This document shows positions 25,700-63,574 of a stretch of 64,000 bases of DNA, in pieces. The stretch is from Octopus bimaculoides (Eukaryota). Under the pieces are notes generated by a model that saw only the letters and a list, made by a program, of their open reading frames with translations, ran no database searches and had not been told where the DNA came from. Made by a program: the position numbers and the translations under genes. How positions within the stretch are numbered: position 1 is the first letter of the stretch; each line of letters begins with the position of its first letter. Location of the stretch: assembly GCF_001194135.2 (NCBI RefSeq), contig NC_068987.1, forward strand, positions 1,081,351-1,145,350. Reading direction: 5' to 3'.

Positions 25700-28688
25700 A
25701 GAGGAGAAAACGTAAGATGTCATGAGAGTGGTGTGAGTTAATAATGAGAGAGGGGGAGGAAGAGAGAGAGATTGATTGGAATGATTTCAATCTTCAGATG
25801 TTTTCTTCCTCAAACCGCCACCCCTATCAGCATATGCGATCTTCCTCCTCCTTCTGCTAGCCACGTGACGCAGTCAACGAAGCGTGACTTCATTAGTTCA
25901 ACCAAGCCCGAGGTCGGGGTGTGTGATGTTCACTGAAGCGAGACAAACTGGACAGAAACAAAATAACGAAACACTGAACAAAAATATGCGAGTCAAAGAG
26001 AAACAATTGTTGTGTAGGAGGTAGTATAGGGTTGGTGGTAGATCAGTGGTGACGGTGTGAGGGGTGTTGTAGTGGTGGTGTCCTAGTAGTAATGTTGTGG
26101 TGACGGCCGTGTTGGAGAGGGTAGCCGTGGTGGTGGTCGTGGTGCTGTTTTCATTGTGGTAGTGCTGGTAGTGGTATGAGGAAGAGGGAGAGTTAGTAGA
26201 GAGGTGGGAAGAAAGAGAAAGATGAGAAAGTATGAAAGAGAAGGCGATGAGAGAGGGGGCAGTAGCGGAGAGAGAGGGGGGAGGAGGAGAGGCTAACTGA
26301 ATGTGAGAGGGAGGAGAGATTGGTGAGAAGAGAGACAGAAAGATATAGAGAGGAGAGGCAAATAGACAGATAATCAAAGAGAGAGAGAGAGAGAAATGAG
26401 GTGGAGGCAGGGAGGTAATGGGGTTGGCACGGTTGGATTGGAGATTTCAGTTTTAATCTCAAAATTACTGAAGAATTTCTTTTAATAGTTTGGTGATAAT
26501 AATGTAATAGCTTTATTGTTGTTGTTGTTGTTGAATCTTATATGTCGTTATTATTGTTAATGTTGTGCTTATTGTTGTTGCGGTCGTTGTTATTGTTTAG
26601 TGTTTATCTTTATTGTTGTTGCTGTTGTCATTATTCGTGCTTTTCGTTCTTGGCATTATTATTATTTTCATCATCATCATCATCATCATCATCAACATCA
26701 TCATCATCATCATCATCNNNNNNNNNNNNNNNNNNNNNNNNNNNNNNNNNNNNNNNNNNNNNNNNNNNNNNNNNNNNNNNNNNNNNNNNNNNNNNNNNNN
26801 NNNNNNNNNNNNNNNNNNNNNNNNNNNNNNNNNNNNNNNNNNNNNNNNNNNNNNNNNNNNNNNNNNNNNNNNNNNNNNNNNNNNNNNNNNNNNNNNNNNN
26901 NNNNNNNNNNNNNNNNNNNNNNNNNNNNNNNNNNNNNNNNNNNNNNNNNNNNNNNNNNNNNNNNNNNNNNNNNNNNNNNNNNNNNNNNNNNNNNNNNNNN
27001 NNNNNNNNNNNNNNNNNNNNNNNNNNNNNNNNNNNNNNNNNNNNNNNNNNNNNNNNNNNNNNNNNNNNNNNNNNNNNNNNNNNNNNNNNNNNNNNNNNNN
27101 NNNNNACTCCGTCCCCCGCCCCCGGCCCCGTCTCTTTCTCTATCTCCACTCGTAATCTCCCGCTCGCCATATTCTCTCACTCCACTTACTTTTTTCATAT
27201 CATCGTTTCAATTTGTAACAAAACGCCAGCAATAAATAGTTTGTAATTTTTCTTCTTAAGATAACACTTCGCTTTATTGATTTATCAAATATTAATCAAT
27301 AAGATCGATATTTCTCATTTCTTTATAGCTCCTTCAACTCTCTTTCTCTCCGCCTCTCCTTCTTACTCTCTCTCTCTTCCATCTCTCATTCTTCACGTTT
27401 CGATTCACAAAATTTCTTCATTCTTCTCTCAGTTCTCATTGTCTCTCTCTCCCTCCTTTTCTCTTTCCCCTCCCTAACCCCCCTTCGCCCCCCTACTTCT
27501 GCTTTCACTAATATTTCCAAACAATCTAACTTTCATTAAGGTGTTAAGATTGACAAAAAGGTCTTTTGGCGAATCGCTAAACGATTCCATCATATTTCAA
27601 GTGACCTCTTGACATGAAGCAGAGGTCAAAAAATTACCCTGGAATAATGTGACAAATTCTTTAGAATGATGACCTTTGACACAGCAAATAGTTTTTGTAG
27701 TTAGTATGTTTGTGTGGGGGGAGCTTCTTTTTTTTTGTTTTTGTTCATGATTTTTTAGTTCAAAAAATGAACTGGAAGTAATTGGTAGAGAGAGAGGGGG
27801 GGGATTTACTAGAATTCTTCAACTATTCATTTGGCATCGCATTCTTCGTTCTTTGTTTTATTCTCTATATCATCCACTTTCTCATAGACAGAGCTAGACA
27901 CATCAACTGTGAGGCATATGTATGTATGTGTATGTATGTATGTATGTATGTATGTATGTGTGTATATATATATATATATGTGTGTATAAATAAACATATA
28001 TGTATGTGTTTATATATGTGTGTGCATATGTATATATATGTATGGATGAGTATATATATATATGTGTGTGTTTATGAGTATGTATATCTGTGTGTACAAA
28101 TGTGTGTGTGTGTGTGTGTTTGTGTGTGTGAACCATCACATTGAACACGTTCGTGTACCTTGGACGTGGGAAAGCCTTTCAATGCAGAAGTAATGTGACT
28201 GTCTCGGGAGAAAATTCTCCTAACAATATATGCGAAGCGATCCGATCAGGCTACAAATGACGTCATCGGATCGTAGGACGCCGGCGCTTTATGCACCACT
28301 ACGCTTCATCGGCTACGAACACAAAACCCATCGTTTATAGCGCACCACAAATGATTGTTCATATAATATTTAAACAGCAAATAGTATGTTGACTTATGTG
28401 CGCCAAGTTTTGCGAAGTTAGACTTAATTAATAAAAGGTAAATAAAGAAAGCAACAGCGACCGAATTATAGGTGTATACAATTATGTTTAACACGCTCAT
28501 TTAAATTTGGGAGAGAGAATATTCTATTCACATATCGGAAGTGACGATATCCCCTGTGACCATGCGCCAATAGAAAAGATTCAAAAAGGCCGAAAGGTAC
28601 AGGGCGTTTTCGTTGGCCGCCGCTGGGACGAATTTATGACTCTCTCTGATGTTTATATTTTTACACATATTTATTTATTTATTTATAT

Positions 28689-28771
<83 letters not shown>

Positions 28772-29670
28772 TATATTTATACATATACATATACATATAC
28801 AAACACACGCATATACACATGCACACACACCTCAGTGTTTGCACTCTTAGCCTCCAGTCATTATATCGGGTTATTATCTCGACTATGTCTATGCTAACAA
28901 AGGAATGTATTATTTACCCGTTGATATTACAGTTGCAAACGCCATGTCGGTATTCCTCTGTTGTTTGCGCTTGTTTCAAACGGTTCTTAATATGTTTCGT
29001 CCAGAAAATAGAAATAGAATCGCTACGAATATTAAATTTTGTCGGACCAATAACTTGAAATGGGACCGCCCGAAATTTAAAGATTATCGTGAGAAGCCCT
29101 ATTGGCACACCGGATAAAATAGCTTTGGTGATATGTGAGACGATATTTCTCTTTACTCATCTCTTGCCTTATATTCCTACGTGGACCAGATATAAATTGT
29201 GAAAGAATCCTTTGAAGGATAACCAGCGATTCTTGTTTCATGGTATGTATATGTATGTATACGTATGTATATGTATGTAAACGTATGTATGATAGGGTTT
29301 TTGTGGTGTAGATTGCACGAAGAATTTTCAATTTTTAGGAATGATATTTGGATTATGATTATCAAAAATGATTTAATTTTATTAGTATAAAGAGTCTGCT
29401 TGTTTTCCAAACAATTAGTTTATATATTACGTTTAAATAAAATATTATATAATTTGGTGCATGGGCATTGTTTGTCAATATTTTTTTTTACAAAACTTTG
29501 GCGATGACGGTGAATGATAATAACGCTCTGTATTTTGACCTCTCAGATCTATAAAGTTATTTGTATCGATGGACAGACTTTGTATTTTATTTGTTTTTAT
29601 TTTACTAACATGAGGAATAAGCTGTCCGTAAAATCCATGTGAGATATGATTTTGTTTTCGTTGTTTAGTC

Positions 29671-29750
29671 TATTATGCTCCAGGCTATAGGGACGTTTTC
29701 AACTGAAGGGTTGTGGAGTTGAAAACGCACCTATAGCATGGAGCATAATA
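29671..29750. other. 80-nt hairpin (34-bp stem, 12-nt loop): candidate pre-miRNA or miniature inverted-repeat element
   Basis: Arms 29671-29704 and 29717-29750 form 31 of 34 Watson-Crick pairs, checked base by base. Confidence 0.85.
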
Positions 29751-30246
29751 TACATTGCATCCCCGCACCACCAATGGAACTAAAAGATGTACACTGCACT
29801 TTGCAGAGAAGTTGTACATACTGTCTGAAGAATGAACGTCATAAAAAGGAAGAGATGAAATGTTATGCATTAAACAAGTTCGGTTCTCACGAGACTTCGT
29901 TTACATCCACGAATAACCCTTTGTCCGTTGGAGAAATGTGAGATAAGAAATAAATGTTTATTAACTTCTGTTTACACCAAAAGCAGAACATGGCTCTGAA
30001 GCTTACCACATGACCTTTTATCAACTAAAGAGATGGGGTGGGGGGCGTGTATCAGCTGTAGCCGTCATCTTGTTGGCTGATTCCCTCGGTAGTAGTAGAT
30101 GGATCGTTGATTTTGCAATGTGTGTGTGTGTATGAGAGAGAGAGAGACAGAATGAGAGAGAGTGTATGTGCATGTGCGAGTAGGCGCATGCATAGCTAGA
30201 TAGACAGATAGATAGAGAAAGAGAGAGACAGATATATATATATATG

Positions 30247-30370
30247 TGGGGAGAATTCACAAAAAAAAGACGAAGACAGGTGTAGAAAACAAACATGTAT
30301 TAGTATAACGCTCGGGAATTGAAAAAAGTCTTTAACGTTTCGAGCCTACGCTCTTCCACAGAAAGGTAGA
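30247..30370 (-). mobile_element. Short Penelope-like repeat (family H2)
   Basis: Similar to 16770-16920; contains a hammerhead-like fold with a perfect helix II. Confidence 0.55.
30328..30365 (-). ncRNA. Minimal type-I hammerhead-ribozyme-like motif with variant core (CUGUGGA)
   Basis: Minus strand CUUU-CUGUGGA-A-GAGC(GUAG)GCUC-GAAA-CGUU-AAAG: helix I CUUU/AAAG, perfect helix II, GAAA, palindromic ACGU, GUU triplet; A6 replaced by U. Confidence 0.55.
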
Positions 30371-31712
30371 CAGAATGATAGATAGATAGATAGATAGATT
30401 CTACACCGTCCTTGGCAAAGAAGTATGAGTTGAGATTGTATAACATCCTTTTGCTAATTGTTTTAGATGTCTTCATAATCGTGAGCAGACACAGAGATAC
30501 TTTCTCTCTTTTTACTTTTGATCCAGTGGAACCTCAAAGATCTAACAAGGGAATTTTTTTCGTATATCCAGATTTATTCGAAATATCATAATTGTATGTA
30601 GGTGTGACTGTGTGTGGGTATGTATACATATATGTGCATATATGAATTGGTGTATGTATATGTGTATGTATGTATGTTTGTATGCTTATGTGTATGTATG
30701 TTTGTATGTGTATATATATATGGATAAAGGTACGCAGATAATTTGGTCCGTAGGTATTTGGTCCGTAGGTATTGCTTTGCCATACTTCAAAAGATTTCTG
30801 CGATGCTGCTTTGCTTCCTCAATACAGATCTAATGACCAAGGTCTCAGACACCCTTCCTGTCGTCTGTCTATACAACAATAACCATATTGTAAGTTTAAC
30901 AAGATATGACATTCATTCCGTTACTACTTTACCCATATTTCATCACAGTTTGTGCTGTTTATTTACTGACCAGATTCTTCTGTAAATTGTCTCCATCAAT
31001 ATCATTGAAAAGAGCTTCAGATAGCATGGATTTTCACATTGCCACATCCAGTTTGATACAAACTGGATATATAAGCCTTAGAACACTCCTACGTGCTTAT
31101 AATTTCTTATGATGTCAACTATTTTAATCTACCGCTTATAGTTCGTGTTTAATGGCAATTATTTACCTGGAGGCGTCTCTTATCAGAAATACCTGAAGAT
31201 TTTTGATAGTTTATCGCACAGTCGTATGTGAATGTTCCTTAATTCATTATTCACTTTGCATCTAGCAATAAAATCAAATTGACCAAAGTTTTCTCGAGTC
31301 TTTCTTCGAACAGAGATAATCCCTTTTAGTTCTCATTCTTGCTATCCCTCTCTCTTACCGCCATCTATTGGCAAACGATAACGACAATGCATTGGGACAT
31401 TCAACGTCAAAAAGCCTGCAGCTTCAGGTTCTGCTAAATGTTCTTCAACATTAAGATTTCTCTTTGTCGTCATAATCATTCATTCATAGAGTGTCTTGTT
31501 TAATATAAAAGCCTTCGATCATGCAGTCAGCTGTCTTTTTATTTTTATCTCACTCTCTCTCGCCCACAATTTCTTATATCTTTAATCATGGATTATAATG
31601 AACGACTTACAAACGGATAAAATTGTAATTAAATTTTCGGACAGTAAACTTTTTAAAAATCCTTATTAATCAAGAAAGAATGCAGAGCCCGGGAAATTTC
31701 CAGGGGAACAGA

Positions 31713-31758
<46 letters not shown>

Positions 31759-32023
31759 CAGACCGACAGACGGACAGACAGAGGAAATACTCTTTTACGT
31801 AGAACTCGCGAATGTTTGTTAAAACGTGGTCTCTGCTAAAGGTACGCAAGTTGTCAGGTGAGGATGCTCAACCGGATAACAGTTACATGTTCGGTGTTAG
31901 TTGCTAAGAGTCTGTTTCAGTCGTCCCATCTACGTGTATGGAATGCGCGCACACACACACACACACACACAGACTTGTTATCTTGAGAGTGTACGGCTGT
32001 ATGCATTACGTACATGTATATGC

Positions 32024-32077
<54 letters not shown>

Positions 32078-33119
32078 GCGTGTGTCTCTGTGTGTATGTG
32101 AGTGTATACGTGCATGTGTATGTGCACATATATATATGCATACGTACAAGTATATGTGCATATATAATATATATTTAAACACCACACACACGTAATTAAG
32201 TATATATATATACATGTGTAAATATATTATACATACAGGCACATATTTATGTCTGTCGGTATGAATTTATATGTGCATGTATGTAAATGAGTATATATAT
32301 GTGCATATATATATAAGTGCGAATATGTGTTTGTGTGTGTGCGTGGGGGGTGGGGGTGGCGAGTCATGCATGAAGGTGTTGCTACAGTTGTAAGTATTTA
32401 ATAATCTGCCGAAGAAAATGAATGTTATCCCTGAAAGTAAACAAAATATTTAAAAAGAAGAACGAAAACAAAAACAACAAAAGCAAAAACAAAAAACGGG
32501 GAATTTGTAATAAACAATCTTCGATGATTTTCCTGTTTTCCGTTCATTTCCTGTGATTGCATCACCATCATCATCATCATCATCATCATCGTCGTCGTCG
32601 TCGTCGTCGTCATCACCTCCACCACCACCACCACCACCACCACCACCATCATCATCATCGACATCATCATCGACATCATCATCGTCGTCGTCGTTGTCAG
32701 GGCCACCATCACCCGCCTTCCCTTTTCCTTCTCATTTCCTTTCCCCTCCCTCTCATTTTCATAATCGATCTATCTATTTAAATCTCCAGGGAACACTTCC
32801 CTTACGCGAACATTTCACCGAACAAATCTCTACCACAACCAAGAGCAGCGCAACATTAAAATGGAAAAACAAAACACAACAAAAAAACAAAAAAATCATG
32901 ATGACAATATCGTTAATAATAACAACAACAACTCCAAAAATATGATAATAATAATAATAATAATAAAAAAAAGTAGCAACAGCGATCATAAGTTGCTACA
33001 TTTAATATCAAAGACCCTTTTCTTGACGCGCTAATTGAATTTCCTCACAGTAAATGGAGCTGTTTTATGACAAAGTGCTGCCAACAGATTTAAAGAAGGC
33101 AAATAAAGGGGGAAAAAAG

Positions 33120-43055: not shown

Positions 43056-43236
43056 TGCACTACTAATTAAATACCTTCTCTGTTGTATTTGGCTCTTAAT
43101 CTTTGTGAATATTTAATGACTCAGCAGGAGAGAGAAGAGTTCAAATCACCACTGAATGTTGGGACTCCAAAAACAAGAGAAGTGATGCAATCGTTGGAGT
43201 ATTCTGCCAGGGTATTAATAATATTTGCTTGTAAAG

Positions 43237-43440
43237 CGGTGAGCTGGCAGTATCGCTTGCACGTCGAGCCAAATGCTTGTCGGAATCTTTTCTGTCTCTA
43301 CGTTCAGTGTTCAAATTCTGCCGATGTTGACTGCTATTATAATTTCGGCGTCAATAAACCAATCGAGCACTAAGGTTCGATGTAATCGTCTTACCTCTTC
43401 CTCCGAAAATACCGGCCTTGTGTCAAAACTTGAAAGCAAT
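43237..43440 (+). mobile_element. SINE family A, diverged full-length copy
   Basis: GCGGTGAGCTGGCAG head, GTTCAAATTCTGCCGA B-box, tail GGCCTTGTGTC. Confidence 0.7.
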
Positions 43441-43908
43441 ATTCTATAGCTGTGACACATTATACGGTTGCCATCACAACAGGCACAGACACCATTAAAC
43501 TACGATCCATTCAAAGGCTTGACTCTAATATCTTCTGAAGAAAACTGCAAACAGTTCAATAACAACGACATATTCCGGAGAATGATTTTCGTATATGCGT
43601 TGGTTTGTTTGCATTCACACACACACACACATATTCACAAACAAGCATACGCAACCACAAACGCACGCGCGCACACACAAACTCACACAACCTGTCATAT
43701 GTGAATAGAGTAAAGACTCTTCATTGGAGGGTGGTCCATGTGACTACATCAATCAGCAATCATCGATCACCAATCATCAATCACCAATCATCGATCAACT
43801 TCAGAGATTGACATCAGAGATTGACTTCAGATAAACATTCTGGTTCAACGAAAAATCGATTCTGAAGTTTTATGAAATGATCTCCCTTTTTCGTTGAGAG
43901 ACTCTAAT

Positions 43909-44127
43909 TATCTTTTCTACTCTAAGCACAAGGCCCGAAATTTTGTGGGAGAAAGCCAGTCCCTTAGATCAACCCCAGTACTCAACTGGTACTTAATTTA
44001 TCGACCCCCGAAAGAATGAAAGGCAAAGTCGACTCGGCGGAATTTGAACTCAGAACGTAGAGACAGACGAAATACCGCTAAGCATTTCACCCGGCGTGCT
44101 AACGATTCTGCCAGCTCAACGCCTTAA
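43909..44127 (-). mobile_element. SINE family A, full length with perfect 13-bp target-site duplication
   Basis: GAGAGACTCTAAT at 43896-43908 and 44128-44140 flanks a complete head-core-tail copy. Confidence 0.9.
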
Positions 44128-44289
44128 GAGAGACTCTAATAATGCCATTAGTTTATACTTTTTTTGCTAAATTCTGCCTAAGAAACACATTTCAGTTCTG
44201 TAAAAATGTGTTGCATTCACCATTGAATACATGAACATCTCTTAACTCATCTGAATTTATGGCATTGTATCCGTTCAGTTATTTACCTT

Positions 44290-49592: not shown

Positions 49593-49826
49593 TCTGAAAC
49601 TTAAAGGAGCACGGACAGAACTAAATGATTACACGTACGCTAGGTCCTGTCTTGGATGCGGTAAGTAATAAGAACTGCAACAATAATTTACTGCTGGGTT
49701 GCATGATACACTGTGTCCGAACACAGCACAGGATGGTCATGAGAGGAACAGTTTGGATAATATTGTTATTGACTGTCTCAATAAATCATACAAGTAGGAA
49801 CGATGAAGGTGGCCAGCTTTCATAAT

Positions 49827-50043
49827 CTTTACTATAGGCATAATGTCTGAGATTTTGGAGGTAGTGGGGCTAAGTCGATCTTTTCGACCGCCGTGCTTAA
49901 CTGGTAATTATGTCATTGACCCCGAAAGAAATTTAATTCAAATTCAACCTCGGCGGAGTTTGAGCTCATAACGTATAAACGGACGAAATGCCGCTAAACA
50001 TTGTTCCGGTCTGTTAACGATTTTGCCAGTTCCTCGATTTACA
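49827..50043 (-). mobile_element. SINE family A with 17-bp imperfect target-site duplication
   Basis: Flanked by TGGCCAGCTTTCATAAT (49810-49826) and TGGCCAGCTTTTATGAT (50044-50060). Confidence 0.8.
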
Positions 50044-63304: not shown

Positions 63305-63574
63305 TGTCACCAACAGAAAACAACATGAAATACAAAAAGCAAATGAGTTAAATACGCAAATAACGAGATAGAAAAATGGACAAGCAATACAAAGAACGAG
63401 CCTTCATTTGATGTCGTCCGTCTATCTACTCCCCATTGATTGCTCGAAGTTGGGAGTAGATAGACAGACGACAACTGGTGAAGAGTTATTCTCTGTATTG
63501 TCCTTTTTTTCTGTCGTTATTTGAGTATTTAACGAATTTGTTTTCGTATTTCATGTTGTTTACTGTTGGTGACA
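63305..63574. repeat. Long inverted repeat (fold-back): arms 63305-63433 and 63452-63574
   Basis: Manual alignment gives about 80% identity (about 24 differences over 129 columns); the innermost 22 bp have one mismatch; 18-nt spacer. Confidence 0.9.

What the first reader, a model, noticed from the sequence alone, without database searches (positions are those of the whole stretch)
29671..29750. 80-nt near-perfect hairpin with pre-miRNA-like geometry in a SINE-free block
Seen: a 34-bp stem with only 3 mismatches, a 12-nt loop (GAAGGGTTGTGG), non-repetitive flanks, and a CNNC (CATC, 29758-29761) about 17 nt beyond a plausible 3p end. Established: Microprocessor prefers stems of about 35 bp, and coleoid cephalopods have a large lineage-specific miRNA expansion. 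Candidate arms: 5p ~AGGCUAUAGGGACGUUUUCAACU and 3p ~UUGAAAACGCACCUAUAGCAUG. Alternative: the hairpin begins and ends with TA, so it could be a MADE1-like 80-bp Tc1/mariner miniature, a known source of new miRNAs.
Basis: partly seen in the sequence, partly recalled or inferred. Interest (0 to 1): 0.7.

Follow-up and report, generated by a model that had tools for sequence, protein, structure and literature searches.

The report
Conserved single-copy microRNA-like hairpin
An 80-base near-perfect hairpin with the dimensions of a microRNA precursor sits at 29671-29750, is single-copy in this window and is far better conserved in related species than the DNA around it, so it is most likely an ordinary lineage-specific microRNA gene, although small-RNA reads could not be checked.

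Summary
Positions 29671-29750 form a 34-position stem with 3 mismatches and a 12-nt loop (-46.6 kcal/mol, z -11.5). The opposite strand folds equally well. A repeat this good is not expected by chance, even once in a 2.7-Gb genome.

The hairpin has no second copy in the window, even a diverged one, and sits in a block without interspersed repeats. No Rfam family reaches threshold.

Public-run data obtained before the read tools were withdrawn show three things:
- The central 151 nt keep 15/15, 12/15 and 8/15 sampled 31-mers in three other species, against 8/47 and 3/47 in the flanks.
- One of those species carries the hairpin between the same, diverged flanks.
- Contigs from probable RNA runs cover it.

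The geometry matches a Microprocessor substrate: an 11-bp lower stem, a 22-23-bp upper stem, loose flanks, a central 2x2 mismatch in the predicted duplex, and CNNC at +17.

My best reading (about 0.55) is a canonical, lineage-restricted miRNA gene, possibly born from an inverted duplication or a miniature transposon.

Not shown: 22-nt reads, the transcribed strand, the genome-wide copy number, and whether MirGeneDB already lists it. Interest is modest.

The parts
29671..29750 (.). The hairpin: two 34-nt arms (29671-29704 and 29717-29750) with 3 mismatches and a 12-nt loop. The transcribed strand is unresolved, with a slight lean to +.
29671..29681 (+). Lower (basal) stem, 5' side: 11 perfect base pairs with 29740-29750. 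This is the distance from the basal junction at which Drosha is expected to cut.
   Evidence: for the structure. The 11-bp rule is established knowledge recalled from memory. One search shows that the flanks beyond add only 2 weak pairs and are otherwise unpaired.
29682..29703 (+). Predicted 5p product AGGCUAUAGGGACGUUUUCAAC. This is inferred, not observed.
   Evidence: Inferred from the geometry. The mismatch at duplex position 2 (29683) loosens its 5' end.
29705..29716 (+). Terminal loop GAAGGGUUGUGG. It is the part that appears to differ in organism C.
   Evidence: In one search the organism C contigs end or lose alignment here.
29720..29741 (+). Predicted 3p product UGAAAACGCACCUAUAGCAUGG, which leaves 2-nt 3' overhangs against the predicted 5p. 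This is inferred, not observed.
   Evidence: Inferred from the geometry.
29692..29693 (+). A 2x2 internal loop with 29728-29729. It falls at positions 11-12 of the predicted duplex, which is typical of miRNA duplexes.
29758..29772 (+). C-rich tract CAUCCCCGCACCACC with CNNC starts at +17, +20, +22, +25 and +27 from the predicted + strand 3p cut.
29660..29663 (-). Mirror CNNC (CAAC on the minus strand) at +17 from the predicted minus-strand 3p cut.
29640..29790 (.). Block whose sampled 31-mers are kept in other species (B 15/15, C 12/15, D 8/15), while the rest of 29400-30000 keeps 8/47 (B) and 3/47 (C).
   Evidence: The counts are my arithmetic from the reported shares.

Best explanation
The hairpin is most likely the precursor stem-loop of a canonical, lineage-restricted microRNA gene. 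It may have been born from a local inverted duplication or a miniature transposon and then kept by selection.

Proposed mechanism, all inferred:
1. A long transcript through 29528-29900 folds locally into a stem of about 35 bp with single-stranded flanks.
2. Microprocessor (Drosha with its partner) cuts about 11 bp above the basal junction, before 29682 and after 29741. A downstream CNNC tract would help.
3. Dicer removes the loop and releases a duplex of about 22 nt, roughly 29682-29703 with 29720-29741, carrying a central 2x2 mismatch.
4. One strand enters a miRNA-class Argonaute and represses mRNAs through its seed.

Shown here: the structure, uniqueness within the window, the orthologue, the conservation and contig coverage. 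Not shown: the cuts, the small RNAs, the strand, the guide arm and the targets.
For: - Structure: a single unbranched hairpin, -46.6 kcal/mol, z -11.45. It stays a discrete hairpin with loose flanks when 120-280 nt are folded.
- Geometry: an 11-bp lower stem, a 22-23-bp upper stem and a 12-nt loop give a 60-nt pre-miRNA. The only internal 2x2 loop lies at duplex positions 11-12. CNNC starts at +17.
- Not chance: 4e-4 such repeats are expected per 2.7 Gb.
- Not repetitive here: there is no other copy in the window, even a diverged one. No tRNA or Rfam family overlaps it.
- Run-through contig: in run X13 of the same organism one 300-nt unitig runs 29528-29827 through the hairpin into both flanks with 0 differences. 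A multi-copy element would be expected to break it.
- Conservation: 31-mer shares are B 1.00, C 0.80 and D 0.53 for 29640-29790, against B 0.37 and C 0.24 for 29400-30000. That is 15/15 versus 8/47 outside in B, and 12/15 versus 3/47 outside in C. The flanks therefore diverge by about 5.6% and 8.5% per site, while the centre is about 0-1% diverged.
- Orthologue: organism C contigs join the hairpin arms to the same flanks, which differ at 29604, 29627, 29637, 29643, 29798, 29842, 29852, 29869 and by an insertion at 29871. No difference is listed inside the hairpin.
- Transcription: those organism C contigs come from runs labelled 'RNA?' at word depths 6.2 and 3.7.
- Pathway: molluscs are reported to lack a dedicated siRNA Dicer and Argonaute, so a short near-perfect hairpin would go down the miRNA route (PMC12479628). 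Octopuses carry 90 novel miRNA families, 35 of them octopus-only (PMC9699675).
Against: - No small-RNA evidence of any kind.
- The stem is almost purely Watson-Crick, with no G-U pair on the + strand. That looks more like a young inverted duplication or a transposon-derived hairpin than an old miRNA.
- Both strands fold equally well and both carry a CNNC, so the strand is open.
- There is no basal UG at -14 and no UGU at the 5' edge of the loop (direct reading).
- The conservation figures rest on sampled 31-mers from runs of coded organism and partly unknown type.
- The difference list is blind within about 30 nt of contig ends, which covers about 29690-29743.
- The 'RNA?' label is a guess, and such runs can contain DNA.
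- The 8-mer site for one register (TTTCAACA, seed GUUGAAA) is listed as a non-seed k-mer in the O. vulgaris miRNA study.
- Genome-wide copy number is unknown.
Confidence: 0.55

Rival explanations
1. It is a relic miniature inverted-repeat transposon of the Tc1/mariner type: a 76-bp palindrome inserted at a TA, with no present function. Its hairpin is simply its two terminal inverted repeats.
For: - TA at both ends and a total length of 80 bp.
- Near-perfect Watson-Crick arms.
- The best Rfam resemblance, on both strands, is RF00906 MIR1120/MIR1122 at 41.1 and 39.3 bits. From memory, this is a plant family made of Stowaway transposon hairpins.
- A second palindrome, about 270 bp long, lies in the same window at 63305-63574, so palindromic elements do occur here.
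Against: - No other copy in about 55 kb of non-gap sequence, even at low stringency.
- One unitig passes through the hairpin into unique flanks.
- The orthologous site in organism C is occupied.
- 31-mers that straddle the TA ends and the first 20-40 nt of flank are also kept in organism B at 15/15. A mobile 80-bp unit would not explain that.
- No change since the split from B, although about 4.5 changes are expected in 80 nt at the flank rate.
- The RF00906 score is less than half the gathering score of 86.
- The two TAs pair with each other, so they are simply part of the palindrome in DNA that is 64% A+T.
Confidence: 0.12
2. It is a conserved structured element that is not a miRNA. One example is a double-stranded segment inside an intron or untranslated region that serves as an ADAR editing substrate or binding site for a double-stranded-RNA-binding protein. 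Another is a DNA palindrome that acts in regulation.
For: - Conservation and contig coverage fit any functional hairpin within a transcript.
- In octopus most A-to-I editing is reported in introns and 3'UTRs, where hairpins are frequent (PMC9699675).
- In X13 a contig runs through the whole hairpin, so uncleaved copies exist.
Against: - The dimensions (11 + 22-23 bp, a 12-nt loop, CNNC at +17, a central mismatch) are specifically those of a Microprocessor substrate.
- No host gene or coding exon is recognisable nearby.
- The A/G differences seen between species were not concentrated in the stem.
Confidence: 0.15
3. It is a neutral local inverted duplication, for example from a replication template switch. 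The apparent conservation would then be an artefact of sparse 31-mer sampling, run coverage or local rate variation.
For: - The three arm mismatches (8.8%) are about what neutral decay since roughly the A-C split would give.
- The conservation estimate rests on 15 sampled words and on coded runs.
Against: - Three species show the same pattern independently.
- Two organism C runs from different studies give the same share, 0.24. That argues the shares reflect sequence rather than coverage.
- At the flank rate of 5.6%, the chance of no change in about 135 nt in organism B is about 4e-4 (my calculation).
Confidence: 0.1
4. It is a hairpin-RNA locus that produces endogenous siRNAs rather than a miRNA.
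For: Near-perfect complementarity of the arms.
Against: - The stem is only 34 bp, enough for one duplex. By my recollection, known hairpin-RNA loci have stems of hundreds of bp.
- Molluscs are reported to lack siRNA-class Dicer and Argonaute and detectable endo-siRNAs (PMC12479628).
Confidence: 0.03

Closest known systems
Cephalopod- and octopus-specific novel miRNA families (Zolotarov et al. 2022, PMC9699675; held in MirGeneDB)
   Same: It is a solitary hairpin with canonical pre-miRNA dimensions and is conserved among related species. The paper reports 90 novel families, none sharing a scaffold with another novel family. No other complex-sequence hairpin lies nearby here either.
   Different: Neither expression nor listing could be checked. 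The supplements held as text carry no miRNA sequences. The seed tables held cover only part of the families. The stem is unusually perfect.
MADE1-derived mir-548 family of primates (80-bp Tc1/mariner miniature; recalled from memory)
   Same: An 80-bp palindrome, TA at both ends and near-perfect arms.
   Different: By my recollection, MADE1 is present in thousands of copies and is poorly conserved. This hairpin has no second copy in the window, occupies the orthologous site in another species and is more conserved than its flanks. No Rfam mir-548 match was reported.
RF00906 MIR1120/MIR1122 (plant hairpins that, from memory, derive from Stowaway transposons)
   Same: It is the best-scoring Rfam model on both strands. 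Stem length is similar and short stretches of letters are shared (UAUA, CGUUUU).
   Different: The score is 41 bits against a gathering score of 86. It lacks the model's conserved outer-stem positions (cCUC/GAGg), which the alignment shows as 4-nt gaps on both sides. It is a plant family. By my estimate the letter identity of about 19/28 is at chance level once all families and offsets are counted.
Mirror (two-strand) miRNA loci, such as fly mir-iab-4/iab-8 and human mir-3116-1/-2 (recalled from memory)
   Same: Both strands fold equally well. Both have CNNC at +17. The 3p products of the two strands would share their first 8 nt, UGAAAACG.
   Different: Transcription of either strand has not been shown. 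The mir-3116 model scores only 22-23 bits against a gathering score of 65.

Membership tests
Canonical animal miRNA gene (MirGeneDB-type criteria, recalled from memory) | An imperfect hairpin with at least 16 paired positions between the arms and a loop of at least 8 nt | tested here: met
   31 bp (+ strand) or 32 bp (- strand) out of 34 positions, with a 12-nt loop.
Canonical animal miRNA gene (MirGeneDB-type criteria, recalled from memory) | A Microprocessor-type stem of about 35 bp, made of a lower stem of about 11 bp and an upper stem of about 22 bp, with single-stranded flanks | tested here: met
   11 + 23 positions. The flanks are unpaired or add only 2 weak pairs in folds of 120-280 nt.
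Canonical animal miRNA gene (MirGeneDB-type criteria, recalled from memory) | Reads of 20-26 nt from both arms with 2-nt 3' overhangs | not testable with these tools
   No small-RNA run was listed.
Canonical animal miRNA gene (MirGeneDB-type criteria, recalled from memory) | Homogeneous 5' ends of the mature reads | not testable with these tools
   Same reason as above.
Canonical animal miRNA gene (MirGeneDB-type criteria, recalled from memory) | Conservation in related species, with the arms conserved more than the loop and flanks | tested here: inconclusive
   The centre is clearly more conserved than the flanks (15/15 vs 8/47, and 12/15 vs 3/47). Arms versus loop is only suggested: the organism C contigs lose alignment in the loop, but the difference list is blind there.
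Canonical animal miRNA gene (MirGeneDB-type criteria, recalled from memory) | Not a repeat and not a fragment of another non-coding RNA | tested here: met
   Met within the window only: no other copy, no tRNA and no Rfam family. Genome-wide copy number could not be tested.
Canonical animal miRNA gene (MirGeneDB-type criteria, recalled from memory) | CNNC 16-18 nt downstream of the 3p cut (an auxiliary feature, not a defining one) | tested here: met
   It starts at +17 on the + strand, but also at +17 on the - strand.
Any named miRNA family in Rfam 15 | A score at or above the family's gathering threshold | tested here: not met
   No match at gathering level anywhere in the window. The best sub-threshold match is 41 bits against 86.
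Tc1/mariner-type miniature transposon (MADE1- or Stowaway-like) | Many dispersed copies | tested here: inconclusive
   One copy in about 55 kb, and a unitig runs through it into unique flanks. The whole genome could not be searched.
Tc1/mariner-type miniature transposon (MADE1- or Stowaway-like) | A TA target-site duplication flanking terminal inverted repeats | tested here: inconclusive
   TA is present at both ends, but the two TAs pair with each other, so they cannot be told apart from the palindrome itself in DNA that is 64% A+T.
Tc1/mariner-type miniature transposon (MADE1- or Stowaway-like) | An empty orthologous site in relatives (evidence of past mobility) | tested here: not met
   The site is occupied in organism C between the same flanks. 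The words are held in organisms B, C and D.
Mirtron | Hairpin ends that coincide with the splice sites (GU at the 5' end, AG at the 3' end) | tested here: not met
   The stem starts UAUUAUG and ends CAUAAUA. There is no GU...AG at the stem ends.
Hairpin-RNA / endogenous siRNA locus | A long double-stranded stem that yields many phased duplexes, and a siRNA-class Dicer and Argonaute in the host | tested here: not met
   The stem is 34 bp. The pathway is reported absent in molluscs (PMC12479628). This applies only if the genome is a mollusc, which I could not verify.

The most novel reading that the evidence does not exclude
A conserved palindromic locus that is processed from both strands into miRNAs. 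The two 3p products would share their first 8 nt, UGAAAACG. The two 5p products differ at position 2. The locus would have been domesticated from an inverted duplication or a miniature transposon during the octopus-lineage miRNA expansion, and would be absent from current catalogues.
Probability: 0.08. Interest if true: 0.55.

Novelty: new member of a known kind. Interest (0 to 1): 0.3.

Why it matters
If small RNAs confirm it, this would be one more lineage-restricted miRNA gene in a group whose miRNA expansion has been linked to nervous-system complexity (PMC9699675). Its almost perfect, TA-ended palindrome, held unchanged across species, would also be a clean example of how a fresh inverted repeat or miniature transposon becomes a selected miRNA gene. 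If it is already in MirGeneDB, the finding is a correct rediscovery from raw sequence and nothing more.

Tried and rejected
- **Rfam.** The 6-kb region in E-value mode gave only microsatellite artefacts (mir-297, mir-466, mir-3149 on TG/TA repeats) and mir-3116 at E 0.2-0.6. The whole window at gathering level gave nothing. The hairpin alone gave only sub-threshold families whose models are long, largely unbroken stems.
- **tRNA scan.** Nothing found.
- **Coding context.** No convincing ORF, and no Pfam domain in ten ORFs, including the one that overlaps the hairpin.
- **Metagenome scan.** A pattern for the apical stem returned five unrelated chance palindromes.
- **Literature, by sequence string.** There was no hit in 8.3 million full texts, nor in the supplements of the octopus miRNA paper or its preprint. 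Those supplements hold no miRNA sequences at all, because let-7 is absent too, so this says nothing.
- **Literature, by seed.** Twelve 8-mers and six 7-mers covering all plausible registers on both strands were searched. Only TTTCAACA was present, as a non-seed k-mer. Only 2 of 6 sampled novel miRNA names occur in the stored part, so absence is uninformative. A search for Obi-/Ovu- names in other papers found none.
- **Small-RNA runs.** None was listed for the word 'miRNA'.
- **Rejected readings.** A mirtron, because there are no splice sites at the stem ends. A hairpin-RNA/siRNA locus, because the stem is too short and the pathway is reported absent.

Full report
**1. The observation**

As RNA, the + strand folds into one unbranched hairpin of 31 base pairs over 34 positions. 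It has a 1x1 internal loop (G29683/A29738), a 2x2 internal loop (G29692, A29693 / C29728, A29729) and a 12-nt terminal loop, GAAGGGUUGUGG. The MFE is -46.6 kcal/mol, z = -11.45, and none of 200 dinucleotide shuffles folds as well.

The minus strand folds equally well: -45.7 kcal/mol, z = -13.4, with 32 pairs because A29693/C29728 becomes a G-U pair.

With the window's base composition, an inverted repeat with at least 31 of 34 complementary positions and a 3-30 nt spacer is expected 9e-9 times per window and 4e-4 times per 2.7-Gb genome. The hairpin is therefore the product of a duplication mechanism or of selection, not of chance.

I also ran a sliding 90-nt fold of the whole window on both strands. 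Apart from TG/TA microsatellites, only two hairpins of complex sequence stand out: this one (-48.9 kcal/mol) and one at 63396-63485.

**2. Surroundings**

- The window is a gap-rich scaffold with 28 runs of N, 13% of its length.
- It has no ORF with a Pfam domain among the ten ORFs tested, no tRNA and no Rfam family at gathering level.
- An interspersed repeat of about 215-240 bp occurs at 1678-1911, 10704-10921, 43907-44144 and 49822-50032.
- The hairpin has no other copy in the window, whether tested with 3 mismatches, with blastn at word size 9 over 28900-30600, or with blastn-short and nhmmer.
- When 120-280 nt are folded, the stem gains only two weak pairs (29668-29669 with 29752-29753) and the flanks stay loose or form small local structures. 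It is a discrete hairpin, unlike the palindrome of about 270 bp at 63305-63574.

**3. Evidence from public runs**

This evidence was obtained before the read tools were withdrawn. Organism names are coded.

*Word shares.* DNA-type runs of organism A hold the whole locus.
- For 29400-30000 (62 sampled 31-mers), a run of organism B holds 0.37, and two runs of organism C from different studies each hold 0.24.
- For the central 29640-29790 (15 sampled words), B holds 1.00, C holds 0.80 and a fourth organism, D, holds 0.53.
- By my arithmetic that is 15/15 central against 8/47 outside in B, and 12/15 against 3/47 in C.
- If a 31-mer survives with probability (1-d)^31, the flanks differ by about 5.6% (B) and 8.5% (C) per site, and the centre by about 0-1%.
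- At 5.6%, the chance of no change in about 135 nt is about 4e-4.
- These runs have 1.4-2.0 Gb of contigs, so they look like whole-genome data. The identical share in the two organism C runs argues that the shares reflect sequence rather than coverage.

*Contigs laid on 29500-29900.*
- In run X13 of organism A, one 300-nt unitig covers 29528-29827 with no difference. A multi-copy element would be expected to break it at its ends.
- In organism C, two runs labelled 'RNA?' have contigs covering 29571-29721 (8 differences) and 29713-29900 (6 differences and one insertion).
- The listed differences lie at 29604, 29627, 29637 and 29643 upstream, and at 29798, 29842, 29852, 29869 and 29871 downstream. 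None is listed inside the hairpin.
- The list is blind within about 30 nt of contig ends, which covers about 29690-29743.
- Both organism C contigs stop or lose alignment around the loop, so the loop is probably where organism C differs.
- The word share of 0.27 for X25 fits my expectation if 29644-29704 is intact.

*What this shows.* The hairpin sits at an orthologous, occupied site in another species. Together with 20-40 nt on either side, it evolves several times more slowly than the surrounding DNA. It is probably transcribed, at a low level. None of this gives the strand.

**4. How it most likely works**

The dimensions are those of a Microprocessor substrate. The rules used here are established knowledge, recalled from memory (Auyeung 2013; Fang and Bartel 2015; Nguyen 2015).
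- The lower stem has 11 perfect pairs (29671-29681 with 29740-29750).
- The upper stem has 22-23 positions.
- The loop has 12 nt.
- The flanks are single-stranded.

A cut 11 bp above the basal junction gives a 60-nt pre-miRNA, 29682-29741. Dicer would then release AGGCUAUAGGGACGUUUUCAAC (5p) and UGAAAACGCACCUAUAGCAUGG (3p) with 2-nt overhangs.

The only 2x2 mismatch falls at duplex positions 11-12. As I recall, that is typical of miRNA duplexes and blocks passenger-strand slicing. The mismatch at position 2 of the 5p loosens that end. The 3p starts with U. The guide arm cannot be predicted.

A C-rich tract at 29758-29772 gives CNNC starts at +17, +20, +22, +25 and +27. The minus strand also has a CNNC at +17, so this motif does not choose a strand. 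The richer tract and the GUG in the + strand loop lean slightly to the + strand.

There is no basal UG at -14 and no UGU at the 5' edge of the loop.

A short hairpin like this would then be handled as a miRNA. All processing steps are inferred; none is shown.

**5. Rivals**

- *Relic Tc1/mariner-type miniature transposon.* It is suggested by the TA ends, the 80-bp length, the almost purely Watson-Crick stem and the best Rfam resemblance. That resemblance is RF00906 MIR1120/MIR1122, which I recall as transposon-derived, at 41.1 and 39.3 bits on the two strands against a gathering score of 86. As a rough comparison, the other perfect hairpin in the window reaches only 26 bits with its own best families. 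Against it: no second copy in the window, the run-through unitig, the occupied orthologous site, conservation that extends beyond the TA ends, and no change since the split from B. I rate it 0.12 as a present-day description. It remains a reasonable origin.
- *Conserved structured element that is not a miRNA.* An editing or protein-binding duplex inside a transcript, or a DNA palindrome, fits the conservation but not the specific geometry. I rate it 0.15.
- *Neutral inverted duplication with spurious conservation.* I rate it 0.10.
- *Hairpin-RNA/siRNA locus.* I rate it 0.03.
- *Mirtron.* Excluded by the stem ends.

**6. Comparison with what is known**

The closest known kind is the set of 90 novel cephalopod and octopus miRNA families, of which 35 are octopus-only (PMC9699675). 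Whether this hairpin is one of them could not be settled.
- The supplements held as text contain no miRNA sequences.
- The stored part of the seed tables covers only about a third of the sampled families.
- None of the 18 seed-site k-mers tried is assigned to a miRNA there. One, TTTCAACA, is explicitly listed as a non-seed k-mer.

The hairpin is not a member of any Rfam family.

**7. Verdict**

This is a known kind of object. It is either already catalogued or a new member. Interest is modest at 0.3. The most novel reading still open is a conserved locus processed from both strands and born from a palindromic insertion. I give that a probability of about 0.08.

Noticed in passing
window 63305-63574: A second, much longer near-perfect palindrome of about 270 bp, centred near 63442. 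It folds at -149 kcal/mol on either strand, and its apical part is a 22-bp stem at 63413-63472 with one mismatch on + that becomes a G-U pair on -. It has no other copy in the window, and its best Rfam matches reach only 26 bits. It looks like a foldback element or long hairpin.
   Followed up: partly
window 1678-1911, 10704-10921, 43907-44144, 49822-50032 (partial copy at 43232-43332): An interspersed repeat family of about 215-240 bp at 68-85% identity, in both orientations. It is probably a SINE, although ARAGORN finds no tRNA-like head.
   Followed up: partly
window 27928-27996, 31990-32340 and other TG/TA microsatellites: Microsatellite hairpins give sub-threshold Rfam hits to mir-297, mir-466, mir-3149 and mir-1277 with E-values as low as 1e-6. 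These are low-complexity artefacts, not miRNA genes.
   Followed up: yes
window 29819-30147 (approx.): In run X13 the unitig that follows the hairpin's unitig has word depth 16.6 against 5.06. This is a step in abundance near 29820 that could mark an exon or transcript boundary.
   Followed up: no
window 29500-29900: Run X15 is listed as holding all sampled words of 29640-29790, yet no contig from it was laid on the stretch. This is unexplained.
   Followed up: no
whole window: There are 28 runs of N totalling 8495 bases, 13% of the window. This is a draft scaffold, so any absence of features near the gaps is uncertain.
   Followed up: yes
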